Shown here one piece after another: positions 1,720-55,818 of a DNA stretch of 64,000 nt (position 1 is its first letter; each line of letters starts with the position of its first letter). Both the position numbers and the translations under genes were made by a program. This DNA is from Macrostomum lignano (taxonomy: Eukaryota). The stretch lies in contig NIVC01000093.1 in NCBI GenBank assembly GCA_002269645.1, positions 558,001-622,000 on the forward strand, written 5' to 3'. The notes below the pieces were generated by a model. The model was not told the DNA's origin. It made no database searches and saw only the letters and a list, made by a program, of their open reading frames with translations.

Positions 1720-1750
<31 letters not shown>

Positions 1751-7761: not shown

Positions 7762-8059
7762 CATACATGCGCAACCTCCAAAATTCATTTGGTCCTGCAA
7801 CTTAGTTTCAACAAAAATGTGACATAGTTTTTGGTAAAAAATGCGACTTACATGTAAAAAAACCCAAAAGCAAAGTTAATGCAACTTTAGGTAAACGGCA
7901 GGAGTATTTATGACTGTCTTATTAAGCCAAAATGCCTCATCAGCTACTTAGTTTTACTACTTGGATGTTTTTTTGGGTGGGCATTTTTGCAACTTCCTTG
8001 GTTGGCTGCCAAATCAGTCAGCCAGATCGGCCAACTGGGCCAACTATTGCGCATGTATG
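7762..8059. mobile_element. 298-bp hAT-type MITE, copy B
   Basis: Perfect 13-bp TIR CATACATGCGCAA / TTGCGCATGTATG and perfect 8-bp TSD CCTCTCTC. Absent from the paralogous unit at 965-3822. Confidence 0.85.
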
Positions 8060-8172
8060 CCTCTCTCCCCTTATCTCTCGTCTCTTCCCTCACCTCTCTT
8101 CTCTCTTGTCTGCTTTCTCATCTCTCCTTTCTCTTCTTTTATCTTTTCTCTCTTCTCGTTTCTCTCTGCTCT

Positions 8173-8232
<60 letters not shown>

Positions 8233-8888
8233 CTCTCCTCTCCCATCACTCTTCTCCTCTCTACTGACTTCTCTCTCCCTGTCTCTCTTTCCTCTAGTCT
8301 CTGTAATCTCTTCTCTCTACTCTCCCATCTCTCGTCTGTTCACCCTCATCTCTGCTCTCTCATCTGTCATCTTTACTCTCCTCTTTCCTGTGTACTCTTC
8401 TGTTTCCCCTTTTCTGACTCCTCTCTTTCCTTACTCCTCTCTTCTTTTCTCTTCCCTCTTCTATACTCTTTCTCCTCTATTATCTTCTCTCATTTCTCTG
8501 CACTCTCCTCTCACCTTTTTAATTTCTCATCTTTGCTTTCTCATCTCTCCTTTAATCTGTCTCATCTCTACAATCTCATCTCTTTCTTCTCTTCTCCTCT
8601 TCCCTTTACTCTCTCATTTCTCCTTTCTCCCCTCTTCTTTCACCACTACCTTATCTCTATCTCTTCTCTTCTCACTCCTCTCTCCCCCTCTTATCTCCTC
8701 CCTTCTCTATCCTTTCTACTCTCTCCTCTCTTCTTGACCCTCTGTCATATTCTTTCTGCTCTCTCATCTCTACTGTCTTCTCACCCTTCTCTACTCTCCT
8801 CTCTCATCAATCCTTTGTCTCACCTCTCCCCTCTTCTCACTCTTTCCTTTCCCTCCTTTCTCCCTTTCTCTTGCTTCTTCCTTCTTCT

Positions 8889-9674
8889 GGCTCATTCCAT
8901 ATAAGCATGGTCGTAACATGACAGGTTATTTTTACTTATAAAATGAAATCTAATAATAGAATATACTAAACCAATATTTTAAATGAAAGATTATTTTGTC
9001 TAGAATATATTTATAGAGTTTCATATAGATATCATCATTAGTATAGATGCTATTAAACCTTAAATGACACTTATGGTTGTAACGACAGGATTTTTGACAT
9101 ATAGAAACTAAAAGGTAAAAGTCTTATAACATTTTTCATTTTTGATATTTTGCAATACATTTTTAAAATTTGACTAAGAACATCTTTAGAAATCATACTC
9201 TTTTATTAGAATATATAAACTCAAAAGGCAACAAAGATACAAAAGAAAAGGCAGCCTTATGGTCGTAACATTATGGTCGTAACATATTTTTTTCTGTCAA
9301 TTCAGTAACTTTGAGGTACTAATACATTAAAAATATAATAGATTATTTGGTCACCAATGCTTTTATCTGATGATGCAAGTACTATACTTTTATCTATAGT
9401 TTGTTTCAACCTTCAAAAGCTTTCTATTTGTTTTTAAAAGGTACAAAATCTTAATGATGTCTTTTGCTTCGAAAAATGTCCAAATTTTTACAAAAATGAC
9501 TTTTTGCCAATTGATAACATACTATTCCAACATTTTACCATTCCTTTATTCTTAGATTGTATATATTGCACAATATAAACATTTGGTAAAAAAATAGGCT
9601 AATTAGGCAATGGCAAGCAAAAATATTGACTTTTTTCTATTTTCCAAATATGTCCATCTTATATGGAATGAGCC
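8889..9674. mobile_element. 786-bp non-autonomous TIR element with 4-bp TSD (superfamily unassigned)
   Basis: Perfect 17-bp TIR GGCTCATTCCATATAAG / CTTATATGGAATGAGCC. The TTCT duplication is supported by the empty site near 2470 in copy 1. Internal TGGTCGTAACA motifs are repeated. Confidence 0.8.
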
Positions 9675-19299: not shown

Positions 19300-22165
19300 A
19301 AGCATTGCCTTTTGATATCCCATAGCCACTCTGATATCCCATAGCCACTCTGATATCCCATAGCCTCTCTGATATCCCATAGCCACTCTGATATCCCATA
19401 GCCACTCTGATATCCCCATAGCCACTCTGATATCACCATAGCCACTCTGATATCCCATAGCCACTCTGATATCCCATAGCCACTCTGATATCACCATAGC
19501 CACTCTGATATCACCATAGCCACTCTGATATCACCATAGCCACTCTGATATCACCATAGCCACTCTGATATCCCCATAGCCACTCTGATATCCCATAGCC
19601 ACTCTGATATCCCATAGCCACTCTGATATCCCATAGCCACTCTGATATCACCATAGCCACTCTGATATCACCATAGCCACTCTGATATCACCATAGCCAC
19701 TCTGATATCCCCATAGCCACTCTGATATCCCATAGCCACTCTGATATCCCATAGCCACTCTGATATCACCATAGCCACTCTGATATCCCCATAGCCACTC
19801 TGATATCCCATAGCCTCTCTGATATCCCATAGCCACTCTGATATCCCATAGCCTCTCTGATATCCCATAGCCACTCTGATATCACCATAGCCACTCTGAT
19901 ATCCCCATAGCCACTCTGATATCCCATAGCCTCTCTGATATCCCATAGCCACTCTGATATCCCATCGCCTCTCTGATATCCCATAGCCACTCTGATATCA
20001 CCATAGCCACTCTGATATCCCCATAGCCACTCTGATATCCCATAGCCTCTCTGATATCCCATAGCCACTCTGATATCCCATAGCCTCTCTGATATCCCAT
20101 AGCCACTCTGATATCACCATAGCCACTCTGATATCCCCATAGCCACTCTGATATCCCATAGCCTCTCTGATATCCCATAGCCACTCTGATATCCCCATAG
20201 CCACTCTGATATCCCATAGCCACTCTGATATCACCATAGCCACTCTGATATCACCATAGCCACTCTGATATCCCCATAGCCACTCTGATATCCCATAGCC
20301 ACTCTGATATCACCATAGCCACTCTGATATCCCATAGCCACTCTGATATCTTCGTAGCCGCTCTGATATCCCAAAGCTACTGTGATATCCCCATAGCCAC
20401 TCTGATATCACCATAGCCACTCTGATATCACCATAGCCACTCTGATATCACCATAGCCACTCTGATATCACCATAGCCACTCTGATATCCCATAGCCACT
20501 CTGATATCACCATAGCCACTCTGATATCCCATAGCCACTCTGATATCTTCGTAGCCGCTCTGATATCCCAAAGCTACTGTGATATCCCCATAGCTTCTGA
20601 AATCCCTGATATCGCCATAACTACTCTGATATCCCATAGCCTCTCTGATATGCCCATAGCCTCTCTGATATCCCCATAGCCTCTCTGATATCCCATAGCC
20701 TCTCTGATATCCCATAGCCTCTCTGATATGCCCATAGCCTCTCTGATATGCCCATAGCCTCTCTGATATCCCCATAGCCTCTCTGATATGCCCATAGCCT
20801 CTCTGATATGCCCATAGCCTCTCTGATATGCCCATAGCCTCTCTGATATGCCCATAGCCTCTCTGATATGCCCATAGCCACTCTGATATGCCCATAGCCA
20901 CTCTGATATGCCCATAGCCTCTCTGATATGCCCATAGCCACTCTGATATGCCCATAGCCTCTCTGATATGCCCATAGCCACTCTGATATGCCCATAGCCT
21001 CTCTGATATCCCCACAGCCTCTCTGATATCCCCATAGCCACTCTGATATCCCCATAGCCTCTCTGATATCCCCATAGCCTCTCTGATATCCCATAGCCTC
21101 TCTGATATGCCCATAGCCTCTCTGATATGCCCATAGCCTCTCTGATAGCCCATAGCCACTCTGATATCCATAGCTTCTGGCACCCTGATATCGCCATAGC
21201 CACTCTGATATCCCCACAGCCTCTCTGATATCCCATAGCCACTCTGATATCCCATAGCCTCTCTGATATCCCATAGCCACTCTGATATCCCCATAGCCAC
21301 TCTGATATCCCATAGCCACTCTGATATCACCATAGCCACTCTGATATCACCATAGCCACTCTGATATCACCATAGCCACTCTGATATCACCATAGCCACT
21401 CTGATATCACCATAGCCACTCTGATATCCCATAGCCACTCTGATATCACCATAGCCACTCTGATATCCCATAGCCACTCTGATATCTTCGTAGCCGCTCT
21501 GATATCCCAAAGCTACTGTGATATCCCCATAGCTTCTGAAATCCCTGATATCGCCATAACTACTCTGATATCCCATAGCCTCTCTGATATGCCCATAGCC
21601 TCTCTGATATCCCCATAGCCTCTCTGATATCCCATAGCCTCTCTGATATCCCATAGCCTCTCTGATATGCCCATAGCCTCTCTGATATGCCCATAGCCTC
21701 TCTGATATCCCCATAGCCTCTCTGATATGCCCATAGCCTCTCTGATATGCCCATAGCCTCTCTGATATGCCCATAGCCACTCTGATATGCCCATAGCCAC
21801 TCTGATATGCCCATAGCCTCTCTGATATGCCCATAGCCACTCTGATATGCCCATAGCCTCTCTGATATGCCCATAGCCACTCTGATATGCCCATAGCCTC
21901 TCTGATATCCCCACAGCCTCTCTGATATCCCCATAGCCACTCTGATATCCCCATAGCCTCTCTGATATCCCCATAGCCTCTCTGATATCCCATAGCCTCT
22001 CTGATATGCCCATAGCCTCTCTGATATGCCCATAGCCTCTCTGATAGCCCATAGCCACTCTGATATCCATAGCTTCTGGCACCCTGATATCGCCATAGCC
22101 ACTCTGATATCCCCACAGCCTCTCTGCTATCACTGATATCCCCATAGCTTCTGACATCCCTGATA
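19300..22165. repeat. 19-20-bp minisatellite (CTCTGATATCC[C]CATAGCCA/T) with ~0.9-kb higher-order duplication
   Basis: Tandem array; diagnostic variant blocks are repeated at ~20545/21485 and ~21165/22065. Confidence 0.95.
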
Positions 22166-39574: not shown

Positions 39575-40331
39575 CCCAAATCCCCGATATCCCAATTCCT
39601 AACATCCCACCAATCTCGATCCTATATACAAATCCCCAATATTCCAATCTCTGATAGTGATAAATGTATTATGTATCCCAATCTCTAATATCCCTATCTC
39701 TAACATCCTAATCTCTGATATTTTAATCTCAGATATCCCAATCTCTGATATCCTAATCTCTGATATTTTAATCTCAGATATCCCAATCTCTGATATCTCT
39801 ATCTCTAACATCCTTATATCTCTGATATCCTAATCTCTGCGATATCCTAATCTTTGATATCCCAATCTCTGATATCCCAATATTTGATATCCCAATCTCT
39901 GATATCCTAATCTCTGATATCCTAATCTCTGATATCCTTATCTCTGATATCCCAATCTCTGATATCCTAATCTCTGATATCCCAATCTCTGATATCCCAA
40001 TCTCTGATATCCCAATCTCTGATATCCTAATCTCTGATATCCCAATCTCTAATATCCTAATCTCTGATATCCTAATCTCTGATATCCTTATCTCTGATAT
40101 CCCAATCTCCGATATCCCAATCTCTGATATCCCAATCTCTGATATCCCAATCTCTGATATCCCATCTCTGATATCCTAATCTCTGATATCCCAATCTCTG
40201 ATATCCCAATCTCTGATTTCCCTATCTCTAACATCCTTATCTCTGATATCCTAATCTCTGCGATATCCTAATCTTTGATATCTTAATCTCTGATATCCCA
40301 ATATTTGATATCCCAATCTCTGATATCCTAA
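39575..40331. repeat. 15-bp minisatellite (CTCTGATATCCCAAT), left segment
   Basis: The same array continues at 44349-44813 and, as a variant, at 53470-53650. Confidence 0.93.
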
Positions 40332-43300
40332 TGTAGTAGGGCATTATTTTTAGGAACGGGAATTAATGCAGGTTTAAATATGCTTTTACCCTACTAGCAG
40401 TAGTTTCAACCCGGGAAAATAACTAGAGCAGGGGTAAGTGGATAAAATCGGGGTTCCTTTAAAAATACAGAGCAGTTGGGCTCTTGGGAAAGAAAGCCTT
40501 TCGTTGGAGTGTCTTCTCCTGTTTAACTTAGAGAGTTCACGAAGAAGTGGTTGTTGTTAAAACGAGGTGCCGTCGAAACCGGCGCGGGTCAGTTCCGAAG
40601 AACTCTGCCGCAGTTATATTTTGTATTTGATCGAAAGAATTAAAAATATTTACAAGATTTCGATTTGAATATTTAATACGAATATTGAAATTAAAAATAT
40701 ACATATATAAAACTATTTTTCAATATTTTGCAGTATTTTGCACGCATTTGGGGATAAAAAAGAGGGGAGGGAAATCCCGCACAAAGAAGGGATCTAATAA
40801 AAACAGGACATCTAAAAAATACATGCTAGGTATTTGAAGGCTTATTGAGAATAAAAGCAAAACATTTAAGTAAAAAATAGAGATTAAAAATGCAATAGCG
40901 CATGTTTGAATTTAGTTGTAAAAATAGAATGAATATAGTAAAGGTGTAAAAAAGCAATTAGTGATATTTGTAGAGCAGTTGGGTAAAAAACACAGTTGGG
41001 AAAATTGTAAAAAGAAACGCGAGGAGACTAGAGATTGCCTAATCAGTCCTAATGACTGATCAGCCGATCTCCGTCTCAGGCAGCAAGTTTAGTTTTATTA
41101 GTTGCGTTTCAGAGCGTGGTCACTTCCGGTTTGGAAGGCTGGTAGCCAGCCTAACCCTGGGGTGGGATTCCCCTGTTTCTTTCCCGACGCCTCATGGCAT
41201 CCCAGAGGACATTGAGGACGGGGGTTCGGCCCGGAGCCCGAGGGGCTTCCGGCTCAATGTGGAAGCTGTGGAGCTTGGCTGCCCTCATCTTGAGCAGCCA
41301 AGCCACCCCAGCTGCTTGACCCTGTCTGCGAGCATCGGCATACCTGCCAGCTTGTGCAGGTATTCGATGCTGATGTAGGATGGCACACCATAGCAGATAC
41401 GGAGAGCCAGGTTTTGAATTTTTTGCAATTTGATTTGGTTAGTCGCACAAATTTGGCTCAGGATTGGCGCTCCGTAGGTGAGAGCGCTTTCTCCGTATGC
41501 CCTGTACAGCATTCTGAGGGTGGTGCTACTCAGCTTAGTCATTTTTGCAATTCTGCACAGTGACATTACAATGGCTCTGCTGGTATCTGCCATGTTGTCC
41601 ACATGTTTGTTCAGGCAGAGGCTCTGGTCAAGGAGGACACCCAGGAATTTCACCTCCTGACAGTACGGAACCTCAGTGTCCCCCAGATACAGTTTGGGTC
41701 GCAAGTCCATGCGCCTAGTGGGTTTGTAGTTGAAAGCGATTGCTTTGCTTTTCCCGGCATTCAGTCTAATGCCCTGTTTACCGCACCAGTCAAAGACTCG
41801 TCTGAGGTAGCTTTGAAGGGATGTTCGGAGCCCCGCAAAGGTGTCTGCTGAGGCCCAGACGGCCATGTCGTCTGCGAATTGACTGCGTTTGACGCTTGAG
41901 ATGGTGGGAGTCGGCATTGAGCTGACGAAGAGGAGGTACAGGAGAGGACTCAGAATGCCTCCCTGAGGGACGCCAGCCTGGATGGTGTGGGGATCGCTTA
42001 GGGCCCCCTCGATTCGAACCTGGATCTGTCTGTCTCGCAGGTAGTCAGACAGGATTCGCATGAGCATAGGTGGAAAACCATCGGTGAGCATGCTATGCCT
42101 GATCTTGTCGTGCCAGGTGGAGTCAAAAGCTGCCTCTGCATCCAGGAAGACTGCAGCGGACTTTTTAGCTTTGCACTTTGCTACCATGACATCTTGTGCC
42201 AGACGGCACAGGTTGTCATACGTGGAGTGAATTTTGCGGTAGGCGCATTGGTCATCTCCTAGGGTCTTATTATCCTCAAGGTGCTTGGTGAGTCTTTTTG
42301 CTATAAGCTTCTCAAACACTTTGCCCAGACATGAGGTCAGGCTGATTGGTCTGTAGGAGTTGGGGTGTTCGGGCGGTTTGTCCGGCTTGGGGATCATTGT
42401 CACCACAGCTTTCTTCCAGGCGCTGGGGAAAATCCCTCGACCGTAGCAGGCGTTGAAGAGGTTAGTGAGTCTCGTGATTGCCACCCCCTCTAAGCCCAGC
42501 TTGAGGACGCAGTTGGGAATCTTGTCCAGCCCGGGTGCTCCATCAGGCCTGAGGTGCTCCAGTTCCCACACTGTGTCTGCCACAGAGAATGCAGCATCAA
42601 GTGGGTGGGTCTCGATGGGTTCGATTCCCTCAGGAACGGGGTAGAATGAGGTGAGCTGTGCCACCTCGGCCACCTCACGTTTGAGCTGTTCGCATGTGGA
42701 AGGGACTGGGCGCATCTTTGAGTCCAGAGTTTCGGCTAGAAGGTTAGCCTTCTCCAGATCTGTGTGCGCAGTTGTTTGACCCAGGGTGAGGCTGGGGATG
42801 GAGGTTGGCTTAAATTTGCCCATCAGCTTTTTAGTGTCGTGCCAGAAATTCTTCACTTTCTTGTTCTTGCTATTTTCAACAATGCTCTCACAGACTTTGG
42901 TGAGCTTTCCATTCTGGAAGGCGCTAATTTCTCTTTTTATGCGATTTGCGAGCTGGTTTGCTTGGGTTTTGAAATTTTGATCCCGTGTGCTGAAGAAGAG
43001 GCGTCTGAGTCGTCTGCGCTCTTTGATCAGGTCGAGGATGTACTTGGGTAGGGCGTTTTTGGCACCACAGTCTGGTACTGTGGAGTCAATCACGGTGTGA
43101 ATGGCCTTTGTGATGTGATCCACTTCGGCATTGATTTGGTCAGCATTTGATAATTTAATATTCTGATCTGAGCTCAAAGCTTCACTGATTTTGAGTCTGA
43201 ACTCGTCCCAGTTTGTTTTTGAGAAGTTTTTGGGTCTGGGGGGACCAGCCCATTTCTTCGACTGAATATTGAGCGTGAGGATTATAGGTAAGTGGTCACT

Positions 43301-44348
43301 GCCCAGGTCAGGACCCACCTCAAAGTCCTGCACAAATGGGAGAAAGTCCTCAGTGGCCAGGGCGAGGTCCAAGACATTCCTAGAAATCAGCCCGTTTTTG
43401 GTGGCCAGTCTGGTGAACTGACCGGCCTGATTGAGTATGGTGGGCGAAGTGGGACCCTCAGACAGCCAGTCGTGCAGCTGGTAGCCAGCCATGTTGTTGC
43501 TGCTGTCACCCCCGAGGAAGCGGTGTCTAGCATTGAGGTCACCCATGAGCACACTGCGCCTACGGGAGAGAAGATTTTTGAGTAGGTTCAGGTTCAGGTG
43601 GTACGGTGCTGGAGACCTGTACACCAGAGCGAGATTGAAGTCAGGACCAGAGTTGTCAGACAAGCTCACGGTGCAGGAGATGGCTTCATGGTTGACATTG
43701 TCATACTGCAAGCGCACATTTGTGAGTTTGACGCGAGGAGAGTGAGCAAGGAGCAGCCCGCGTTTTACATGCGGGGTATCATACCGGATGATGGAGTACC
43801 CGGGAATCTGGACAGTGTGACAACTTTTGAGAATGGTCTCAGAGAAGAGGGCAATGTCTAGCTCCTGACTGACGACCCACTGTGTCAGCTCTCTGATTTT
43901 CGGGTTGAATCCTCTGCAGTTTAAATGCATAATCTTCAGGGCTGTGGTTTGATTGTTTGAGTCTACAGTTAACGCACTGAAGTTTCAATTCAAGTCTTGA
44001 GTTTAGCTGCCTGAGACTAGGGTTAGGCTTGCACAGAGGAGTCTTGCCTCTAAATATTGGGAGTCTTGCCCAACGCACAACGGGAATAAAACTAGGGAAT
44101 TAATGTAAAACAAATAACCTTTTGTACGCATTCTCTTTATTATTAAATATTTCCAACTGTTAACTATAATCTTTGGTGTCCTGACTCACTTCTTAATCTA
44201 AAGTACTGGAATTAGGGAAAGCAGGAAACCTGGTGGCAGCGAAACTACCAAATCTCAAATCAGTGCAGCAGACAATAATCCACTAGTAAAATCCTTAGCA
44301 GCAAATAGAAAACCAGTAGCCTAAACCGCAGGTACCACGACTTGTCCA
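40332..44348 (-). mobile_element. 4.0-kb single-ORF non-LTR-type retroelement inserted in the minisatellite
   Basis: Flanked by CTAA(T) duplication that restores the array unit GATATCCTAATCTCTG; termini read TGTAG...GTCCA. Confidence 0.8.
41285..43930 (-). CDS. APE endonuclease + reverse transcriptase (I/Jockey-group LINE ORF2-like), 881 aa
   Basis: EN motifs HLNCRG, SET, GDLNARH, LDLAL and SDHLPI. RT motifs PGLDKI, YRPISLTS, GVPQGGILSP, FADD and FLGV. A probable 1-nt frameshift near 41306 would extend the C-terminus to ~41150. Confidence 0.95.
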   Translation of the reverse strand: MHLNCRGFNPKIRELTQWVVSQELDIALFSETILKSCHTVQIPGYSIIRYDTPHVKRGLLLAHSPRVKLTNVRLQYDNVNHEAISCTVSLSDNSGPDFNLALVYRSPAPYHLNLNLLKNLLSRRRSVLMGDLNARHRFLGGDSSNNMAGYQLHDWLSEGPTSPTILNQAGQFTRLATKNGLISRNVLDLALATEDFLPFVQDFEVGPDLGSDHLPIILTLNIQSKKWAGPPRPKNFSKTNWDEFRLKISEALSSDQNIKLSNADQINAEVDHITKAIHTVIDSTVPDCGAKNALPKYILDLIKERRRLRRLFFSTRDQNFKTQANQLANRIKREISAFQNGKLTKVCESIVENSKNKKVKNFWHDTKKLMGKFKPTSIPSLTLGQTTAHTDLEKANLLAETLDSKMRPVPSTCEQLKREVAEVAQLTSFYPVPEGIEPIETHPLDAAFSVADTVWELEHLRPDGAPGLDKIPNCVLKLGLEGVAITRLTNLFNACYGRGIFPSAWKKAVVTMIPKPDKPPEHPNSYRPISLTSCLGKVFEKLIAKRLTKHLEDNKTLGDDQCAYRKIHSTYDNLCRLAQDVMVAKCKAKKSAAVFLDAEAAFDSTWHDKIRHSMLTDGFPPMLMRILSDYLRDRQIQVRIEGALSDPHTIQAGVPQGGILSPLLYLLFVSSMPTPTISSVKRSQFADDMAVWASADTFAGLRTSLQSYLRRVFDWCGKQGIRLNAGKSKAIAFNYKPTRRMDLRPKLYLGDTEVPYCQEVKFLGVLLDQSLCLNKHVDNMADTSRAIVMSLCRIAKMTKLSSTTLRMLYRAYGESALTYGAPILSQICATNQIKLQKIQNLALRICYGVPSYISIEYLHKLAGMPMLADRVKQLGWLGCSR

Positions 44349-44813
44349 CTAATCTCTGATATCCTAATCTCTGATATCCCAATCTCTGATATCCTTATCT
44401 CTGATATCCCAATCTCTGATATCCCAATCTCTGATATCCCAATCTTTGATATCCTTAATTCTATTATCCCAATCTCTGATAACCTAATCTCTGATATCCT
44501 TATCTCTATCATCCCATCTCTGATATCCCACTCCCTGATATCCTAATATCTGATATCCTAATCTCTGATATCCCAATCTCTGATATCCCAATCTTTGATA
44601 TCCCAATCTCTGATATCCCAATCTCTGATATCCCAATCTCTGATATCCCAATCTCTGATATCCCAATCTCTGATATCCTTATCTCTATTATCCCATCTCT
44701 GATATCCTAATCTCTGATATCCCAATCAACTGATATCCCAATCTCTGATATCCCAATCTCTGATATCCCAATCTCTGATTTCCTTATCTCTGATATCCCA
44801 ATCAACTGATATA
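44349..44813. repeat. 15-bp minisatellite, middle segment
   Basis: CTCTGATATCCCAAT units lying between the two insertions. Confidence 0.93.
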
Positions 44814-47800
44814 ACTACTAAGGGATTCCGTAAGTGTTGATTTTGGAGGTGGGGTGGGTGTCAACCCTCCTCGCCTCTCATTGGCTGGCGCCCCGATCAC
44901 TAGGTGATCGATACCCGTATCGATATCGGCGCTCGGCGCGCGCGCGCCGCAGGCGCGTGGCGCCAAGCGCCGTCCAGCCGCAGGCGACCCTCCCGAGCCA
45001 CCGGCGACCCTCCCCAGCCGCAGGCGCACCTACCGATATGTATGCTCACCCTACCGACATGTACCCCGATATGTACACCCTCCCGAGCCGCAGGCGCACC
45101 CTCCCGAGCCGTAGGCGCCCATGCCGCAGACGCCCATGCCGCAGACGCCCATGCCGCAGACGCCCATGCCGCAGGCACCCCGAGTGTACACTCTACCGAG
45201 CCGCAGGCACCCCGAGTGTACACTCTACCGAGCCGCAGGCACCCCGAGTGTACACTCTCCCGATATGTACACTCTACCACTCTCCCGATATGTAGTCAAC
45301 GATACGTACCCCGCAGGCACCCTATACCTCACGCCCTGCCCCCACCTAGCCTCTTCCCCTCTCTCACCCACATCTCAACTAGCGAAATCGAACCCAGGTC
45401 GCGCCCATACTAGGCCACTACACGGTTTGGGGGTATAGGGAGCGAGAAGTTTTAACCCCGATGCTGACGCAGCCCTGTACACTGAGCAACCAACCCCCCA
45501 TGCGGGGGACAGAGAGCAGCCCTGTAGCTGGGGACAGAGAGCAGCCCCTGTAGCAGGAGGGGTAGTGCGTGGAGAGCCGCCATCCCCCTGTAGCAGGGGA
45601 CAGATAACAGGCGGCCCCCTGTAGCAGTATGAGGCGGGGTACAGAGAGACACGGGGTGCTGGGACAGAGAGTGCGTGGAGGCACCCTGCGCAGCCCCGGC
45701 ATGTCGCAGCACGCGGCGTGGACAGAGAGGCGCATGCTAGGACAGAGAGGCAGTGTGAGTCACACACACCCCACAGAGAAAGCCATACAGAGGATAGAGA
45801 GCTCCCTCCCCAGTTGCAGGGGACAGAGAGGCAGGCAGGGTATGCAGGGGCATGCGAACCGTCAAGGGGCCACGCGAGGATAGAGTGGAGGAGCAGAGAT
45901 GTGTATGGACAGAGAGCCAGCCACGCGTGCGTAGTGTGAGGGAACAGAAACATATGGAGCAGGAGGGAGATAGGAAGCAAACGCGCTGGGTAAGGGAGCC
46001 ACACAGGGCGGTACAGTGAGACACGGGCAGGGGTGGAGCCGTGCGTGGACAGAGCTGAACGGCACGGTCAGCTGCAGGAATAGGATGATAGAGAGGCGCG
46101 GAGGGGGACAGAGAGCAGTGTGCAGGGGTAGGCAGCCACGCAGGCTGGGGAACAGAGAGGCGCGTGTCAGGCAGTTGCAGCCCGGGACAGAGAAGTATGA
46201 AGGGGGGGCCTGGGACAGAGTTGCGAGCAAGGCACAGAGAGAGGTAGGGTCCGGTAGCTATGTATAGGCAGGGACCCACGCGAGGGCAGGACAGGGCACG
46301 CAAGGCATGCAAGTTACATGCAAGGGCAGTGAGGTGTGCGCGGAGGGAGACAGAGAGCAGTGTGTAGGGGTAGGTAACAGCAAACTTTAGTAGAGGCGCG
46401 TGCGGGGACGGAGAAACCAGTCTGAGCGTACAGAGACGTTACAGAGAGGTACACAAACAGAGACCAAAGCGGGCAGAGCACGTGTAGGGACAGAGACGTG
46501 AGGGAGAATCGACCAAAACACGCTATGTATTTTCAAAAGTTGGTTTTAGTGCAGCATATTTAATAACGGGTAGTATAATAGTATGTACATAGTAGGTATA
46601 ATGGTAGTAATAATAGTAAGTATATTAGCCCAAAAGGTAGGCTAAAACAGGCTAAACTGTGTGTACGCATCCTCATCACCCCACAAGCCCCCTCTCCCGC
46701 CAGACTCACTCTCCCAAACCCTCCTGTATTGCTGTATGAAGGAAAATATAGTGTAAAAATACAGATCTTAACCGTCAGACCGCTGAAATCAGGGCACACT
46801 AGAGGGGGTTTCGGGGTCTGCATGCTCTATGTAAGCTGCTTGAGGAGGTTCCAAGGGCGTTGTGAGGGTTTCCATTATGTTTTGAAAAAACTAGGGGCTT
46901 AAATACAACGTTTTATTCAAAAAGTAGGTTATTTTAATGAAATAGCTGACACAATCATTGTCGAGAGTAGAAATTTTTATAAGAAACCAGGCATTTTAGC
47001 AAAAATAAACCTTCAAACCACATAAAATTGAATAAAAAGCAGACATTTTCAATTATAAACCGCAAGTATTTTAATAGAAAAGTAAGCAAACAAGGCACAA
47101 AACCAGCAAATTTTACCTTTCTATTTTAATGTTACTGATAAGGTAGAGAGTAGAAACTTGTGAGCTGTACGGAGTTAGAAAGTATTAACCATTATGTATC
47201 GTATGAATTATTAGTTCAGTACCAGCCATTGGTCAAGCGAGCATTTATGAAGTTATTACGAGTGATGAAGGGATAGAGAGCTATATACAGGAAGACAGTA
47301 TCCTTCTAAACCACCACGAACAGATTGCTAATAGAGATAAGCTTTGTCTGTGTGCAGTATGAGTAAGCGAGGGCGGGGCAAATACTTTTCCACATGCCGG
47401 ACAGAACAGTATTGTGCTAGGATTTCTCTCGAAATCACGGTACGTTACTAGTTTTTATCACACCATCCAGATGCGTCAACTAGTCAGCAGTAGTCATTTA
47501 TATGTTATTAGAACTTGCAAACCCAGGTCAGGTAAATATTACAAAGAGTATATTACGTACACACGCCAACTCCGAATACCAAGCCATACTAGTCTACTTG
47601 CAGTGCTCCTGGAGGGAAGGGACGGTCAAGAGTTACACAACAAGAATACATTCACACAAAGAGTACACCACTCGAGCCCCGTCCATGCGCCCCGATATGT
47701 ATGATGCAGGCAACCCTCCGATATGTATGCCCTCCCGAGCCGCAGGCGCCCATGCAGCAGACGCCCATGCCGCAGGCACCCCGAGTGTACACTCTACCGA

Positions 47801-50800
47801 GCCGCAGGCGCCCGAGTGTACACTCTACCGATATGTACACTCTACCACTCTCCCGATATGTGTGTACATCGATTTGTAGTCAACAATACCTATTAACACA
47901 AAATTAGGCTAGTGAAAACTACTTATAGTAGGTGAAATTGCGTATATTTACATAAAAAGTAAGCAAAACACATATTAATCACATCAGTAGGTGTAAATAT
48001 CGGTGCATAATACATATTACGAAACATATAGGTGTACGGACATATAGAATTAAGCATATGGGCAGCAAAAAACACACAATGTAGGTGCATTTTATCGATA
48101 TTTTGGCAGAAAAGTAGGTGAAATAGACAAAATAGTAGGTATAATACACAGAACCTACTCATTAGTGTAGTAGGCGCTTGTAGATGCTAGTATATTGTAA
48201 AACATAGGTTGAAATACACATACGCACAGTAGATACAAGTATAATGCAGGTGCATATGCACACACTATAGATTCGAATTATGTAGATGCATAGGCTAAAA
48301 TACACACACCGTAGAGGTAGAAGCAGGCATAATGCAGGAAAATTATGATACATATTAGTGCGTAAAGTATCATATTATGACACGCTGTAGCACATATTGA
48401 CATAATGCAGGGGAAAATATTGACAGAAATAGTGCACAATTGTAGAGGTAACAACCCGCCAACTAGTAAGGGCATCCAGCACTTGTTCGGGTTATTATTA
48501 TTTCGAGACGAGTGTCATGCCCCCGCAAGAGATCTTATCAGAAATTTGTTGAACTCCACTGCAACTCTCCCAGAGCCTCCAAATGTGAGTTTTTAACCCA
48601 GGGTCGAGTACAAAGGACCCGCCCACTCTTAACCCCAAGGGGTGATCGTAGCGGAGACCAAGTACAGTGCGGACGGAGAGGGGTAACAGAAAGCGCTGCA
48701 TCAGACCGCAGGGCTGCATTCCTCCCCCGAGGTAGGCGCGTCAGCTCCCACTCCTCATTTAACCATCAAGTAAACTAAAGAAGTCAAGCAGAAAGCCTTA
48801 CAATCACCCGCAACCAGCACAAGTAAGAGTACTTTCCACTAGAGAGCCATAGTGCAAGATTCGCGAGCCAAGTTGAAGAAGCACACCAAATTACACTAAA
48901 GACATATGTATTAAAAAGCATACCGGCACCTCTACAAAAACACAGTATGTACCGATTAAAGTTGCTTTTGGTGCAGTGTATTTAATAAAAAGCTGGTACA
49001 AACACACACACACACACACACACTCAGGCGCATCCTGCAGCGCATCCTGCAGCACCGATCGCCGCAGGCGATGGCGCCATCGGCAGGAAGCTCTTGCTGT
49101 GAATACACCTGAGTGTGTGTGTGTGTGTGTGTGTTTGTGTACATTGTGTACATTGTGTACATTTGGTCCTATATACCGGAAATTGCGTACATTTATGCGT
49201 ACAATTATGTCTATGCGCTACATTGTGTGTAGTTCGTTGCCCTGCGTTTGTAAATACAGTTTAGCCCGTGCACTGCATTGATGCCTACTTTTGTGTTAGG
49301 TACCAGCTTTTTATTAAATACACTGCACCAAAAGCAACTTTAATCGGTACATACTGTGTTTTTGTAGAGGTGCCGGTATGCTTTTTAATACATATGTCTT
49401 TAGTGTAATTTGGTGTGCTTCTTCAACTTGGCTCGCGAATCTTGCACTATGGCTCTCTAGTGGAAAGTACTCTTACTTGTGCTGGTTGCGGGTGATTGTA
49501 AGGCTTTCTGCTTGACTTCTTTAGTTTACTTGATGGTTAAATGAGGAGTGGGAGCTGACGCGCCTACCTCGGGGGAGGAATGCAGCCCTGCGGTCTGATG
49601 CAGCGCTTTCTGTTACCCCTCTCCGTCCGCACTGTACTTGGTCTCCGCTACGATCACCCCTTGGGGTTAAGAGTGGGCGGGTCCTTTGTACTCGACCCTG
49701 GGTTAAAAACTCACATTTGGAGGCTCTGGGGAGAGTTGCAGTGGAGTTCAACAAATTTCTGATAAGATCTCTTGCGGGGCATGACACTCGTCTCGAAATA
49801 ATAATAACCCGAACAAGTGCTGGATGCCCTTACTAGTTGGCGGGTTGTTACCTCTACAATTGTGCACTATTTCTGTCAATATTTTCCCCTGCATTATGTC
49901 AATATGTGCTACAGCGTGTCATAATATGATACTTTACGCACTAATATGTATCATAATTTTCCTGCATTATGCCTGCTTCTACCTCTACGGTGTGTGTATT
50001 TTAGCCTATGCATCTACATAATTCGAATCTATAGTGTGTGCATATGCACCTGCATTATACTTGTATCTACTGTGCGTATGTGTATTTCAACCTATGTTTT
50101 ACAATATACTAGCATCTACAAGCGCCTACTACACTAATGAGTAGGTTCTGTGTATTATACCTACTATTTTGTCTATTTCACCTACTTTTCTGCCAAAATA
50201 TCGATAAAATGCACCTACATTGTGTGTTTTTTGCTGCCCATATGCTTAATTCTATATGTCCGTACACCTATATGTTTCGTAATATGTATTATGCACCGAT
50301 ATTTACACCTACTGATGTGATTAATATGTGTTTTGCTTACTTTTTATGTAAATATACGCAATTTCACCTACTATAAGTAGTTTTCACTAGCCTAATTTTG
50401 TGTTAATAGGTATTGTTGACTACAAATCGATGTACACACATATCGGGAGAGTGGTAGAGTGTACATATCGGTAGAGTGTACACTCGGGGCGCCTGCGGCT
50501 CGGTAGAGTGTACACTCGGGGTGCCTGCGGCATGGGCGTCTGCTGCATGGGCGCCTGCGGCTCGGGAGGGCATACATATCGGGAGGGTTGCCTGCATCAT
50601 ACATATCGGGGCGCATGGACGGGGCTCGAGTGGTGTACTCTTTGTGTGAATGTATTCTTGTTGTGTAACTCTTGACCGTCCCTTCCCTCCAGGAGCACTG
50701 CAAGTAGACTAGTATGGCTTGGTATTCGGAGTTGGCGTGTGTACGTAATATACTCTTTGTAATATTTACCTGACCTGGGTTTGCAAGTTCTAATAACATA

Positions 50801-53469
50801 TAAATGACTACTGCTGACTAGTTGACGCATCTGGATGGTGTGATAAAAACTAGTAACGTACCGTGATTTCGAGAGAAATCCTAGCACAATACTGTTCTGT
50901 CCGGCATGTGGAAAAGTATTTGCCCCGCCTTCGCTTACTCATACTGCACACAGACAAAGCTTATCTCTATTAGCAATCTGTTCGTGGTGGTTTAGAAGGA
51001 TACTGTCTTCCTGTATATAGCTCTCTATCCCTTCATCACTCGTAATAACTTCATAAATGCTCGCTTGACCAATGGCTGGTACTGAACTAATAATTCATAC
51101 GATACATAATGGTTAATACTTTCTAACTCCGTACAGCTCACAAGTTTCTACTCTCTACCTTATCAGTAACATTAAAATAGAAAGGTAAAATTTGCTGGTT
51201 TTGTGCCTTGTTTGCTTACTTTTCTATTAAAATACTTGCGGTTTATAATTGAAAATGTCTGCTTTTTATTCAATTTTATGTGGTTTGAAGGTTTATTTTT
51301 GCTAAAATGCCTGGTTTCTTATAAAAATTTCTACTCTCGACAATGATTGTGTCAGCTATTTCATTAAAATAACCTACTTTTTGAATAAAACGTTGTATTT
51401 AAGCCCCTAGTTTTTTCAAAACATAATGGAAACCCTCACAACGCCCTTGGAACCTCCTCAAGCAGCTTACATAGAGCATGCAGACCCCGAAACCCCCTCT
51501 AGTGTGCCCTGATTTCAGCGGTCTGACGGTTAAGATCTGTATTTTTACACTATATTTTCCTTCATACAGCAATACAGGAGGGTTTGGGAGAGTGAGTCTG
51601 GCGGGAGAGGGGCTTGTGGGGTGATGAGGATGCGTACACACAGTTTAGCCTGTTTTAGCCTACCTTTTGGGCTAATATACTTACTATTATTACTACCATT
51701 ATACCTACTATGTACATACTATTATACTACCCGTTATTAAATATGCTGCACTAAAACCAACTTTTGAAAATACATAGCGTGTTTTGGTCGATTCTCCCTC
51801 ACGTCTCTGTCCCTACACGTGCTCTGCCCGCTTTGGTCTCTGTTTGTGTACCTCTCTGTAACGTCTCTGTACGCTCAGACTGGTTTCTCCGTCCCCGCAC
51901 GCGCCTCTACTAAAGTTTGCTGTTACCTACCCCTACACACTGCTCTCTGTCTCCCTCCGCGCACACCTCACTGCCCTTGCATGTAACTTGCATGCCTTGC
52001 GTGCCCTGTCCTGCCCTCGCGTGGGTCCCTGCCTATACATAGCTACCGGACCCTACCTCTCTCTGTGCCTTGCTCGCAACTCTGTCCCAGGCCCCCCTTC
52101 ATACTTCTCTGTCCCGGGCTGCAACTGCCTGACACGCGCCTCTCTGTTCCCCAGCCTGCGTGGCTGCCTACCCCTGCACACTGCTCTCTGTCCCCCTCCG
52201 CGCCTCTCTATCATCCTATTCCTGCAGCTGACCGTGCCGTTCAGCTCTGTCCACGCACGGCTCCACCCCTGCCCGTGTCTCACTGTACCGCCCTGTGTGG
52301 CTCCCTTACCCAGCGCGTTTGCTTCCTATCTCCCTCCTGCTCCATATGTTTCTGTTCCCTCACACTACGCACGCGTGGCTGGCTCTCTGTCCATACACAT
52401 CTCTGCTCCTCCACTCTATCCTCGCGTGGCCCCTTGACGGTTCGCATGCCCCTGCATACCCTGCCTGCCTCTCTGTCCCCTGCAACTGGGGAGGGAGCTC
52501 TCTATCCTCTGTATGGCTTTCTCTGTGGGGTGTGTGTGACTCACACTGCCTCTCTGTCCTAGCATGCGCCTCTCTGTCCACGCCGCGTGCTGCGACATGC
52601 CGGGGCTGCGCAGGGTGCCTCCACGCACTCTCTGTCCCAGCACCCCGTGTCTCTCTGTACCCCGCCTCATACTGCTACAGGGGGCCGCCTGTTATCTGTC
52701 CCCTGCTACAGGGGGATGGCGGCTCTCCACGCACTACCCCTCCTGCTACAGGGGCTGCTCTCTGTCCCCAGCTACAGGGCTGCTCTCTGTCCCCCGCATG
52801 GGGGGTTGGTTGCTCAGTGTACAGGGCTGCGTCAGCATCGGGGTTAAAACTTCTCGCTCCCTATACCCCCAAACCGTGTAGTGGCCTAGTATGGGCGCGA
52901 CCTGGGTTCGATTTCGCTAGTTGAGATGTGGGTGAGAGAGGGGAAGAGGCTAGGTGGGGGCAGGGCGTGAGGTATAGGGTGCCTGCGGGGTACGTATCGT
53001 TGACTACATATCGGGAGAGTGGTAGAGTGTACATATCGGGAGAGTGTACACTCGGGGTGCCTGCGGCTCGGTAGAGTGTACACTCGGGGTGCCTGCGGCT
53101 CGGTAGAGTGTACACTCGGGGTGCCTGCGGCATGGGCGTCTGCGGCATGGGCGTCTGCGGCATGGGCGCCTACGGCTCGGGAGGGTGCGCCTGCGGCTCG
53201 GAGGGTGTACATATCGGGGTACATGTCGGTAGGGTGAGCATACATATCGGTAGGTGCGCCTGCGGCTGGGGAGGGTCGCCGGTGGCTCGGGAGGGTCGCC
53301 TGCGGCTGGACGGCGCTTGGCGCCACGCGCCTGCGGCGCGCGCGCGCCGAGCGCCGATATCGATACGGGTATCGATCACCTAGTGATCGGGGCGCCAGCC
53401 AATGAGAGGCGAGGAGGGTTGACACCCACCCCACCTCCAAAATCAACACTTACGGAATCCCTTAGTAGT
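44814..53469. mobile_element. 8,656-bp foldback element: 4.2-kb inverted arms, 300-bp spacer, 6-bp TSD, no recognisable ORF
   Basis: Arms 44814-48999 and 49300-53469 are reverse complements. Termini are ACTACTAAGGGATTCCG / CGGAATCCCTTAGTAGT. GATATA lies directly on both sides (44808-44813, 53470-53475). Confidence 0.9.
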
Positions 53470-53650
53470 GATATACCAATCCCAAATATCCCAATCCCAA
53501 ATATCCCAATCCCAAATATCCCAATCCCAAATATCCCAATCCCAAATATCCCAATCCCAAATATCCCAATCCCAAATATCCCAATCCCAAATATCCCAAT
53601 CCCAAATATCCCAATCCCAAATATCCCAATCCCAAATATCCCAATCTCAA
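53470..53650. repeat. 15-bp minisatellite variant (CCCAAATATCCCAAT), right segment
   Basis: Homogeneous variant of the host array. Confidence 0.9.
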
Positions 53651-53747
53651 TTATTCCAATCGCAAAAACCAAATCAACTGACATCGAATCGCCGAACTTT
53701 TTTAACAGCCCAATTCTAACCTGGAATTCTTACCTAGAATCCCAATT

Positions 53748-53973
53748 TCAAACACCCCTTATCCAACTATCAGAAATATCCTCATTTCGAATAGCTAAAG
53801 TACTGAAGAAGCTCACGAATCGAAGCCGGTTTTTGCAGGCCCAATACAGCAGCAGCAGCAGCAACGCAGCCAGCAAAGAGATCCCCAATGTAGCGATTGC
53901 GTTAATTGCAACTGAGGGAATTTCAGCGAGTAGCTTCTCCAACTGCCTTTGTGTTAAAAATTTGGTCCGTTGT
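53748..53973 (-). CDS. GNPTAB: GNPTAB exon with C-terminal transmembrane helix (may end at 53817 if spliced)
   Basis: QRTKFLTQRQLEKLLAEIPSVAINAIATLGISLLAALLLLLLYWACKNRLRF; acceptor TTTGCAG is in phase. Confidence 0.75.
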
Positions 53974-54059
53974 CTGCAAAATTATGGGAGTAACGAACGA
54001 TTTATGACTAATTAAATCTTAAAATGAACTATCGAAAAAATGTATTGTCATTTTCTCAC

Positions 54060-54221
54060 TGGTGCACAGCTGGTTCTATCGAAGTTGCCTCGTAGTTGCT
54101 AAGCAGCTCGAATTCGCTCGGCACCGGAAAGTACGAAGACAAAAACTTGTGAAGCAGCCGCTGCACTGAAGCTGAGCCCGGGTCCGAGTAGTTCATGTCG
54201 TCATTGAGGCAGAGGAATTTT
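54060..54221 (-). CDS. GNPTAB: GNPTAB exon, Stealth CR4
   Basis: (R)KFLCLNDDMNYSDPG...SYFPVPSEFEL, compared with human RKFVCLNDN...FPIPSQFEL. Confidence 0.9.
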
Positions 54222-54274
54222 CTGGGAGGGGATTGTTCGGTGACTGCGGCTGCTCAGGGATAGGAAAAGTGCGG

Positions 54275-55050
<776 letters not shown>

Positions 55051-55068
55051 ACAATTATCCAAGCAAAC

Positions 55069-55268
55069 CTTGGGCTGTGAATCACTTCCTGCAAGTGGCT
55101 ATTCGTAGACTCGAAGCTGGCTGTGAGCATCTTGAACCAAACCGAGCTGTCGTCCTCCAGTTGATAGCTGAAAATTGGCTGCTTTTTTGTGGCATTTTCG
55201 GCCACTTGCTGAAGCCACGGACAGCTCGAGAGCTTGTTGAGCGGTTTGGACTTCCACTGGAGCGGCTC
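55069..55268 (-). CDS. GNPTAB: GNPTAB exon
   Basis: EPLQWKSKP...SSVWFKMLTASFESTNSHLQEVIHSP(R); phases fit both neighbours. Confidence 0.82.
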
Positions 55269-55309
55269 CTGAGTTTAGAGTGAATAGGAGAGTGAGTAAT
55301 TTAATAAGT

Positions 55310-55818
55310 AAATGAGTGAGTCAGTGAGTGAGTGAGTGAGTGAGTGAGTGAGTGAGTCAGTGAGTGAGTGAGTGAGTGTGTGAGTGAGTGAGTGAGTGAG
55401 TGAGTAACTGAGTGAGTGAGTGAGTGAGTGAGTGAGTGAGTGAGTGAGTGAGTGACTGAGTGACTGAGGGGGTGAGTGAGTGAGTGAGTGACTGAGTGAC
55501 TGAGTGACTGAGGGGGTGAGTGAGTGAGTGAGTGACTGAGTGACTGAGTGACTGAGTGAGTGACTGACTGACTGAGTGACTGAGTGAGTGACTGACTGAC
55601 TGACTGACTGACTGACTGAGTGACTGAGTGACTGAGTGACTGAGTGACTGACTGACTGAGTGACTGAGTGACTGAGTGAGTGACTGACTGACTGACTGAG
55701 TGACTGAGTGACTGAGTGACTGAGTGACTGAGTGACTGACTGACTGAGTGACTGAGTGACTGAGTGACTGACTGACTGAGTGACTGAGTGACTGAGTGAC
55801 TGAGTGACTGAGTGACTC
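55310..55818. repeat. (GTGA)n/(GACT)n compound microsatellite intron
   Basis: Direct observation. Confidence 0.95.

What the first reader, a model, noticed from the sequence alone, without database searches (positions are those of the whole stretch)
44808..53475. Giant 8.7-kb non-coding foldback element with ACTACT termini and a 6-bp TSD
Seen: the arms are 4,186 and 4,170 bp. I found only five differences between them (one 15-bp unit, three 1-nt indels, one substitution), which exactly explains the 16-bp length gap. They enclose a 300-bp spacer. GATATA is duplicated in direct orientation, and it is a non-consensus variant of the array's GATATC, which supports a true integration. No transposase, integrase or polymerase motif is visible. 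Known: 6-bp TSDs and short tandem-repeat termini typify Polinton/Maverick elements (protein-primed replication), but their ends are usually AG...CT and their TIRs far shorter. Classic foldback elements (FB, Galileo) have 7-9-bp TSDs. Inference: a non-autonomous copy-back/snap-back derivative of an unrecognised Polinton-like or novel linear replicon, mobilised in trans.
Basis: partly seen in the sequence, partly recalled or inferred. Interest (0 to 1): 0.88.

Follow-up and report, generated by a model that had tools for sequence, protein, structure and literature searches.

The report
Giant non-coding foldback mobile element
An 8.7-kb stretch made of two almost identical 4.2-kb mirror-image arms is a real gene-less mobile element inserted into a satellite repeat; its ends look like those of virus-like Maverick/Polinton elements, but this single copy cannot prove that link.

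Summary
The element spans 44814-53469 (8,656 bp): arms of 4,186 and 4,170 bp around a 300-bp spacer, flanked by GATATA on both sides. GATATA occurs nowhere else in about 70 units of the surrounding GATATC/AATATC satellite, so the 6-bp target-site duplication is real.

One correction: the arms differ by nine events, not five. These are one 15-bp unit, seven 1-nt C/G-run length differences and one substitution. The net difference is still 16 bp.

Six-frame Pfam, Rfam and tRNA searches find nothing in the arms. No relative turned up in any viral, metagenome, phage, plasmid or protein collection; the host, an unidentified animal-like eukaryote, is not in those collections.

- **For a Maverick link:** perfect inverted ends, a trinucleotide doubled at each 5' end ((ACT)2) and a 6-bp duplication match the published Maverick format.
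- **Against it:** the letters differ from the published motifs, no Maverick gene remnant is present, and arms this long are unreported for Mavericks.
- **Precedent for the architecture:** a 9-kb Drosophila Galileo copy has 4.2- and 4.7-kb inverted repeats and no transposase.

Best reading (about 0.4): a non-autonomous foldback carried by Maverick-type machinery. Main rival (about 0.3): a foldback of an unrecognised cut-and-paste family. Interest is moderate.

The parts
44351..44807 (.). Left flank: 15-bp satellite (unit AATCTCTGATATCCC), the target array. The same array continues at 39674-40332 on the other side of a LINE insertion.
   Evidence: TRF; sequence; unit listing
44808..44813 (.). 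Left copy of the 6-bp target-site duplication, GATATA
   Evidence: GATATA occurs only here and at 53470 within the arrays
44814..44819 (+). Left end motif, (ACT)2; its mirror (AGT)2 is at 53464-53469
44814..48999 (+). Left arm, 4,186 bp, non-coding
44814..44973 (+). Unique GC-rich terminal region with short local hairpins. CpG is not depleted in the terminal 500 bp (observed/expected about 1.1, against about 0.58 in the host).
44974..45308 (+). Subterminal block R of tandem sub-repeats (20-, 21-, 15- and 32-bp units). It holds the only unit-number difference between the arms.
   Evidence: TRF
45311..46500 (+). GC-rich (61%) region of degenerate GGACAGAGAG-type repeats; long but spurious reading frames
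   Evidence: no homologue for the 230-aa frame
46509..46566 (+). Island M, conserved (76%) with M' at 48931-48988
47684..47892 (+). Block R', a second, direct copy of block R (94-98% over the shared units), about 2.6 kb further in
48931..48988 (+). Island M', ending 11 bp before the inner end of the arm
49000..49299 (.). Asymmetric 300-bp spacer
48998..49138 (.). Imperfect 141-nt hairpin, (AC)n ... (GT)n, abutting the left arm (-55.8 kcal/mol, z = -9.6). The rest of the spacer (49139-49299) is unique and unstructured.
   Evidence: the weak Rfam miRNA hits there are below threshold
49300..53469 (-). Right arm, 4,170 bp, mirror image of the left arm
53470..53475 (.). Right copy of the 6-bp target-site duplication, GATATA
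53476..53666 (.). Right flank: variant 15-bp satellite (AATATCCCAATCCCA), 11 identical units

Best explanation
It is an integrated, gene-less mobile DNA with a foldback shape. What is shown: it entered a GATATC-type satellite as one unit, through cuts staggered by 6 bp, and both ends carry the same sequence, beginning with a doubled trinucleotide. What is inferred: (1) The helper enzyme is an integrase of the Maverick/Polinton type supplied in trans by an autonomous element elsewhere in the genome. The three end features that a non-coding copy can show (perfect inverted ends, a short unit reiterated at each 5' end, a 6-bp duplication) are the combination published for Mavericks. The reiterated ends would also suit protein-primed copying with 'jumping back'. 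(2) The two arms arose in a single strand-switch (copy-back) event: DNA synthesis ran through one half plus the 300-bp centre, then switched to the complementary strand and copied the same half back. A switch inside a strongly hairpin-forming (AC)n/(GT)n stretch, with AACACA/TGTGTT complementarity just inside both arm/spacer junctions, fits this. (3) The arms are still almost identical either because the event is recent or because the arms correct each other by gene conversion.
For: The structure and duplication are real. The flanks on the two sides are different sequences, so the palindrome has defined ends. The ends are 5'-(ACT)2 on both strands. Published Mavericks carry perfect 6-bp duplications, inverted ends and a reiterated 6-7-bp end motif, interpreted there as allowing jumping-back in protein-primed replication (PMC8097293). 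A doubled trinucleotide at an arbitrary end is expected by chance about 1 time in 64. Other families that make 6-bp duplications fail on the ends: IS3EU/GingerRoot have TA..TA termini (PMC10045372), and Dada has no inverted ends and targets small-RNA genes (PMC3706591). Polintons can have inverted repeats of about 2 kb that include genes, so inward growth of the ends occurs in this group. The centre has a -55.8 kcal/mol hairpin next to the arm boundary. The arms differ by one substitution and one repeat unit, plus homopolymer-length differences.
Against: The end letters, (ACT)2//(AGT)2, are not among the reported Maverick motifs, which are (AGT)2//(ACT)2, (AG)3//(CT)3 and (AC)3A//T(GT)3. The arms hold no remnant of any Maverick gene at E<=1. 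A copy-back of the first 4.5 kb of a typical gene-dense Maverick should contain some, so the parent would itself have had to be non-coding. Arms of 4.2 kb are 2-3 times the longest inverted repeats reported for the group (1,447 bp; about 2 kb). Non-coding, non-autonomous Maverick derivatives are barely documented. Only one copy is available, and no relative or helper was found. The end-motif match was noticed after the fact.
Confidence: 0.4

Rival explanations
1. It is a foldback derivative of an ordinary cut-and-paste DDE transposon from an unrecognised or atypical superfamily that makes 6-bp duplications. The arms grew by recruitment of internal sequence and tandem repeats into the inverted ends during gap repair, as described for Galileo.
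For: Nearly the same architecture is documented: Galileo copy 112 of D. willistoni is 9,021 bp, with inverted repeats of 4,246 and 4,680 bp containing tandem repeats, and no transposase (PMC4168063). The arms here have a unique tip followed by blocks of 15-32-bp sub-repeats, the classic foldback layout. The target GATATC is a palindrome, as is usual for DDE enzymes.
Against: Of the cut-and-paste superfamilies checked in the literature here, only IS3EU/GingerRoot and Dada make 6-bp duplications, and both fail on the ends. Galileo makes 7-8 bp and FB makes 9 bp (my own knowledge). This reading leaves the doubled trinucleotide at the ends as a coincidence (about 1 in 64).
Confidence: 0.3
2. A conventional element with short inverted ends inserted here, making the 6-bp duplication. 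The giant palindrome formed later at this locus, when repair or gene conversion starting in one end copied that half over the other. The palindrome itself has therefore never moved.
For: This explains the duplication, the defined ends and the near-identity of the arms equally well. The hairpin-prone centre would favour template switching during chromosomal replication too.
Against: Nothing distinguishes it from formation before integration when only one copy is available. It does not say which enzyme made the insertion, so it modifies the two readings above rather than replacing them.
Confidence: 0.15
3. It is an inverted dimer of a roughly 4.5-kb non-coding retroposed RNA, made by target-primed reverse transcription from both nicked target strands (a twin-priming-like event). 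One copy is 300 nt shorter at its 5' end. On this reading the outer ends are RNA 3' ends and the centre is where the two cDNAs were joined.
For: The geometry fits: a single duplication around two inverted copies, with one copy 300 nt longer at the inner end. A LINE with an intact endonuclease-reverse transcriptase frame sits 460 bp away in the same satellite, with a short 4-5-bp flanking duplication.
Against: Classical twin priming inverts different parts of one RNA; it does not duplicate the same part (my own knowledge). The arm ends are no more similar to the 3' end of the neighbouring LINE than shuffled sequence is. There is no poly(A) or long microsatellite tail. The unique tip plus sub-repeat layout is that of DNA transposons.
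Confidence: 0.07
4. It is an assembly artefact, for example a foldback chimeric long read or an inverted duplication created by the assembler.
For: All seven 1-nt differences between the arms are homopolymer-length differences. This shows the assembly comes from error-prone long reads, which can produce palindromic chimeras.
Against: A chimeric read would give mirror-image flanks. Here the flanks are different sequences: the left satellite plus LINE, versus the variant satellite plus an (AGAC)n array. Both junctions show the same terminus next to a duplicated non-consensus hexamer. The centre is an asymmetric 300-bp spacer rather than a bare turn.
Confidence: 0.04

Closest known systems
Maverick/Polinton virus-like elements (as characterised in vertebrates, PMC8097293)
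   Same: Perfect 6-bp target-site duplication. Terminal inverted repeats. A short unit reiterated at each 5' end (there (AGT)2, (AG)3 or (AC)3A; here (ACT)2).
   Different: No genes at all, versus 7-8 or more conserved core genes. 8.7 kb, versus 12.7-24.6 kb. Arms of 4.2 kb, versus inverted repeats of 46-1,447 bp (about 2 kb in some butterfly polintons). The end letters are not among the reported motifs.
Galileo (P superfamily) two-TIR copies, especially copy 112 of Drosophila willistoni (PMC4168063)
   Same: About 9 kb, made almost entirely of two inverted repeats of more than 4 kb that contain tandem repeats. No transposase.
   Different: Galileo makes 7-8-bp duplications with the consensus GTATTAC/GTANTAC, and its arms are unequal and decayed. 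Here the duplication is 6 bp (GATATA) and the arms are nearly identical. No sequence similarity was tested, because no Galileo sequence is available in these tools.
Classic foldback elements (Drosophila FB and others)
   Same: Long inverted arms, with a unique tip followed by arrays of short sub-repeats, a small or absent centre, and mostly non-coding copies.
   Different: FB makes 9-bp duplications (my own knowledge, not tested here). FB arms are built almost wholly of sub-repeats, whereas about 90% of each arm here is not tandemly repeated.
IS3EU/GingerRoot DNA transposons (PMC10045372)
   Same: 6-bp target-site duplications and inverted ends.
   Different: Their complete families always end TA..TA (occasionally TG..CA). 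This element ends AC..GT, and no shift of the boundaries gives TA..TA with a matching duplication.
Snap-back defective genomes of viruses and linear replicons
   Same: One half of a genome copied back on itself, giving a highly symmetric palindrome without coding capacity and with two identical replication ends (general description in PMC13506859).
   Different: Those are free replicating molecules, described mostly for RNA viruses. Adenovirus examples rest on my own knowledge. This is a chromosomally integrated DNA copy, and its replication as a free molecule is not shown.

Membership tests
Maverick/Polinton | Perfect 6-bp target-site duplication | tested here: met
   GATATA at 44808-44813 and 53470-53475, unique within the satellite. 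Criterion.
Maverick/Polinton | Terminal inverted repeats | tested here: met
   The ends are perfectly complementary. However, the arms are 4.2 kb, against a published range of 46-1,447 bp or about 2 kb.
Maverick/Polinton | Conserved end motif: a 2-3-nt unit reiterated at each 5' end ((AGT)2, (AG)3, (AC)3A) | tested here: inconclusive
   The format is met (a trinucleotide repeated twice), but the letters are (ACT)2, not a reported motif.
Maverick/Polinton | Encodes a protein-primed family B polymerase and a retroviral-type integrase (plus capsid, ATPase and protease genes) | tested here: not met
   No Pfam family at E<=1 in six frames of arm plus spacer. No homologue of the longest arm frame. 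This is expected for a non-autonomous derivative, but it means membership cannot be shown from this copy.
Maverick/Polinton | An autonomous relative with the same ends in the same genome | not testable with these tools
   The host genome is absent from every collection searched.
Galileo / P superfamily foldbacks | 7-8-bp duplication with the GTANTAC-type consensus | tested here: not met
   6-bp GATATA. A 7-bp reading (TGATATA) requires ends offset by one base and does not fit the consensus.
Galileo / P superfamily foldbacks | Long inverted repeats with internal tandem repeats; two-TIR copies without transposase | tested here: met
   comparator
Drosophila FB-type foldback | 9-bp duplication (my own knowledge) | tested here: not met
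   6 bp
IS3EU/GingerRoot | 6-bp duplication | tested here: met
IS3EU/GingerRoot | TA..TA (occasionally TG..CA) termini | tested here: not met
   The termini are AC..GT. Shifting the boundaries to TA destroys the flanking duplication (sequence; criterion).
Dada | No terminal inverted repeats; insertion into tRNA or snRNA genes | tested here: not met
   Perfect inverted ends. The target is a 15-bp satellite, with no tRNA or Rfam hit at the site.
LINE twin-priming product | The 3' end is shared with, or recognisable by, a partner LINE, and the two segments are different parts of one RNA | tested here: not met
   No similarity above shuffled controls to the neighbouring LINE's 3' end. The two arms are the same sequence.

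The most novel reading that the evidence does not exclude
The element is a germline-integrated 'snap-back' mini-replicon of a Maverick/Polinton-like virus-like element. On this reading it is a gene-less palindrome that keeps only two identical replication and integration ends, is copied by the helper's protein-primed polymerase and is inserted by its integrase. It would be the DNA-transposon counterpart of a defective interfering genome.
Probability: 0.2. Interest if true: 0.7.

Novelty: new member of a known kind. Interest (0 to 1): 0.45.

Why it matters
Near-perfect palindromes of more than 4 kb per arm are rare in assembled genomes. They are unstable, were long unclonable, and are seen only with long reads. 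This one is a clean example: sharp ends, a verifiable target duplication and almost no arm divergence, which implies recent activity or arm-to-arm correction.

If the Maverick-type reading holds, Maverick machinery would be shown to carry gene-less passengers, a class hardly documented. It would also give indirect evidence that the machinery has recently been active in this host.

Whatever the enzyme, such a structure is a likely fragile site. If transcribed, it would also be a source of long hairpin RNA. Both consequences can be examined descriptively.

Tried and rejected
- **Coding content.** The arms have no Pfam match in six frames at E<=1. There is no tRNA and no Rfam family at gathering score. 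The only low-score Rfam hits are (AC)n/(GT)n hairpin look-alikes of miRNA families. A tRNA-like GGTTCGA motif at about 45375-45440 does not fold as a tRNA and was dropped.
- **Other copies in the window.** There are none: the arm against the rest of the window gives no blastn hit, and the terminal 26-mer occurs only at the two ends.
- **Other copies elsewhere.**
  - Exact-match scans found nothing for the terminal 21-mer, a subterminal repeat or an inner unique 22-mer in viral contigs. The terminal 21-mer and the inner 22-mer were also absent from metagenome contigs.
  - blastn of arm plus spacer found nothing in phages or plasmids.
  - A protein search with the 230-aa arm frame found nothing.
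  - Exact look-ups of a 209-aa arm frame and of the LINE protein found nothing.
  - The bacterial/archaeal genome collection was not scanned, because it is irrelevant to a eukaryotic host.
- **Host identity.** It is unresolved. A PP2A-A exon is 62-65% identical to shark, bryozoan, rotifer and insect sequences, 47-56% identical to fungal ones, and 69% identical to its best hit, a metagenome protein. The host is therefore probably an animal or a close relative. The nearest LINE relatives are only 57-60% identical, and two fetched contigs did not help.
- **LINE partnership.** The neighbouring LINE's 3' end shows no similarity to the arm ends beyond shuffled controls.
- **Alternative boundaries.** Placing the ends so as to obtain TA..TA termini, or 2-, 3-, 4- or 8-bp duplications, leaves no matching flanks.
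- **Literature not available.** Kapitonov & Jurka 2006, Krupovic & Koonin 2015 and Daniell & Mullenbach 1978 are not in the paper library.
Full report
**1. Observation**

An inverted-repeat search of 43000-55500 returns a chain of collinear blocks, 99-100% complementary, that together make one large palindrome. A global alignment of the left half with the reverse complement of the right half fixes the anatomy:
- element 44814-53469 (8,656 bp);
- left arm 44814-48999 (4,186 bp);
- spacer 49000-49299 (300 bp);
- right arm 49300-53469 (4,170 bp).

The terminal 26-mer occurs exactly twice in the window, once on each strand at the two ends, against 0 expected.

The arms differ by nine events:
- one extra 15-bp unit of a sub-repeat in the left arm;
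- one substitution;
- seven single-base differences, not the three reported.

All seven single-base differences are length differences in C or G runs. That pattern is typical of long-read homopolymer error, so the true arms may differ by only two events in 4.17 kb.

**2. The duplication is real**

The element sits in a 15-bp satellite. The left array has units GATATCCCAATCTCT. The right array has 11 identical units AATATCCCAATCCCA. Across the three blocks of this satellite there are 60 GATATC and 14 AATATC. GATATA occurs only twice, at the two junctions.

The right-hand copy departs from its own array's consensus at two positions, and both departures match the left-hand copy. It also resets the repeat phase by exactly six bases. 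This is what a 6-bp target-site duplication predicts and array periodicity does not.

A 7-bp reading (TGATATA) is possible only if the ends are offset by one base, so I keep 6 bp. The target, a one-base variant of the palindrome GATATC, is the kind of site DDE enzymes prefer.

**3. Not an artefact**

A foldback chimeric read would give mirror-image flanks. Here the left flank is satellite plus a LINE, and the right flank is a variant satellite followed by an (AGAC)n array. Both junctions carry the same terminus next to the duplicated hexamer, and the centre is an asymmetric 300-bp spacer.

**4. Content**

Each frame of arm plus spacer has 49-78 stops in about 1,495 codons. No Pfam family reaches E<=1 in any of the six frames. 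There is no tRNA and no Rfam family at gathering score. The only sub-threshold hits are miRNA look-alikes of an (AC)n/(GT)n hairpin. The longest arm frame, 230 aa in a 61% GC stretch, has no homologue among 5.8 billion protein clusters.

From the outside in, each arm has:
- a unique GC-rich tip of about 160 bp;
- a 330-bp block R of tandem 15-32-bp sub-repeats;
- 1.2 kb of degenerate GGACAGAGAG-type repeats;
- an AT-rich 1.2 kb;
- a second, direct copy of R (R');
- another AT-rich kilobase.

Two short islands recur at a spacing of about 2.4-2.6 kb, while the sequence between them is unrelated. They are R/R' and a 58-bp motif M/M'. Each arm therefore holds an old internal direct duplication in which only these islands were kept. 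I cannot explain this.

In the terminal 500 bp CpG is not depleted (observed/expected 1.1). The host average is 0.58.

**5. Centre**

The first 141 nt of the spacer fold into a strong imperfect hairpin (-55.8 kcal/mol, z = -9.6). The remaining 161 nt are unique and unstructured. Just inside the spacer at both junctions lie complementary AACACA/TGTGTT stretches. This fits a single template switch at a hairpin-prone site, but it does not prove one.

**6. Setting**

The window is nuclear DNA of a eukaryote. It holds exons of a family X DNA polymerase, a LYAR-type zinc-finger protein, AP-5 sigma and the PP2A scaffold subunit. Different minisatellites fill the introns and spacers.

The PP2A exon is 62-65% identical to vertebrate, bryozoan, rotifer and insect proteins, and 47-56% identical to fungal ones. 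No hit exceeds 69% over its full length. The host is probably an animal or a close relative, and it is not represented in the collections.

A LINE with an uninterrupted 881-codon endonuclease-reverse transcriptase frame splits the same satellite 460 bp to the left.

**7. Search for relatives**

Nothing was found in any of these:
- the rest of the window;
- viral contigs;
- metagenome contigs;
- phage and plasmid records;
- exact protein look-ups.

Every conclusion about family therefore rests on one copy.

**8. Comparison with known kinds**

Vertebrate Mavericks have perfect 6-bp duplications and inverted repeats of 46-1,447 bp. They also have a conserved end motif made of a reiterated short unit, (AGT)2//(ACT)2, (AG)3//(CT)3 or (AC)3A//T(GT)3. 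That motif is interpreted as serving the jumping-back step of protein-primed replication (PMC8097293). A table of characteristic duplication lengths gives 6 bp for Polinton, 4 bp for Ginger1, 4-5 bp for Ginger2 and 3-6 bp for LTR elements (PMC10045372).

This element has the same format: inverted ends, a doubled trinucleotide and 6 bp. Its letters, (ACT)2//(AGT)2, are not among those reported. It has none of the genes, and its arms are two to three times the longest repeats reported for the group. Some butterfly polintons do have repeats of about 2 kb that contain genes.

Other families that make 6-bp duplications fail on the ends:
- IS3EU/GingerRoot always end TA..TA.
- Dada has no inverted ends and inserts into small-RNA genes.

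Foldback families fail on the duplication. Galileo makes 7-8 bp, and FB makes 9 bp by my own knowledge. The architecture itself, however, has a precedent. Galileo copy 112 of D. willistoni is 9,021 bp, with inverted repeats of 4,246 and 4,680 bp that contain tandem repeats, and it has no transposase. Giant arms therefore do not by themselves call for a linear replicon.

**9. Mechanism**

Shown:
- integration as a unit through 6-bp staggered cuts;
- two identical ends;
- no genes, hence dependence on functions supplied in trans.

Inferred, about 0.4: the helper is a Maverick-type integrase, possibly with its polymerase, and the arms arose by one copy-back event at the hairpin-prone centre. The main objection is that 4.5 kb copied from the end of a gene-dense Maverick should contain gene remnants, and none is present. 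The parent would then have been non-coding already.

Rivals:
- A cut-and-paste foldback of an unrecognised superfamily (about 0.3).
- Formation of the palindrome at this locus after insertion of a conventional element (about 0.15). This reading is compatible with either enzyme.
- An inverted dimer made by reverse transcription from both target strands (about 0.07). It is weakened by the lack of any similarity to the neighbouring LINE's 3' end and by the transposon-like sub-repeat layout.
- An assembly artefact (about 0.04).

**10. Verdict**

It remains circumstantial, and the 'unprecedented' size of the arms is not unprecedented among foldbacks.

I file it as a new member of a known kind: a non-autonomous foldback-type mobile element of unassigned superfamily. 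Interest is moderate. All proposed follow-up is descriptive, and the functional test of mobility is left out.

Noticed in passing
window 40333-44350 (ORF 41285-43930, minus strand): A LINE is inserted in the same 15-bp satellite, splitting it into 39674-40332 and 44351-44812. It has one uninterrupted 881-codon frame with endonuclease and reverse-transcriptase domains. There is no room for a first ORF in the 420 bp upstream, whereas a 57%-identical relative (L001) has a 684-aa upstream gene. It is flanked by TAAT/CTAAT, and its sense strand ends ...CCCTACTAC. The nearest relatives are only 57-60% identical.
   Followed up: partly
window 13320-35000: A compact cluster of host genes (family X DNA polymerase, LYAR zinc finger, AP-5 sigma, PP2A scaffold subunit). 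Each intron and spacer is filled by a different 15-31-bp minisatellite. TRF reports 49 rows for the window.
   Followed up: partly
window 965-3823 vs 7210-10971: An old segmental duplication: 965-1517 matches 7210-7759 (76%), 2473-3823 matches 9674-10971 (80%), and 6215-6515 matches 7759-8059 (83%). Each copy is followed by TC-rich low-complexity arrays.
   Followed up: no
window 4789-5089: A MITE-like unit of about 300 bp with 64-nt inverted ends (84% complementary). It is flanked by CATAAG on both sides if the right end carries three extra T, or by CAT if the ends are extended. The duplication length is therefore ambiguous (3 or 6 bp).
   Followed up: partly
window 45058-45308 / 47684-47892 and 46509-46566 / 48931-48988: Within each arm, two short islands (sub-repeat block R and a 58-bp motif M) recur in direct orientation about 2.4-2.6 kb apart. 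The sequence between them is unrelated (GC-rich in one unit, AT-rich in the other). This selective conservation suggests the islands matter, but it is unexplained.
   Followed up: partly
window 53476-53666 vs 44351-44807: The satellite differs on the two sides of the element: 11 identical AATATCCCAATCCCA units on the right, and heterogeneous GATATCCCAATCTCT units on the left. The switch of variant coincides with the insertion site, as if the element blocks homogenisation between the two halves.
   Followed up: no
window 19313-22131: A 2.8-kb array of a 20-bp unit (TGATATCCCCATAGCCACTC) is about 66% similar to the 15-bp GATATCCC satellite that hosts both insertions. It appears to be a related satellite family.
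   Followed up: no
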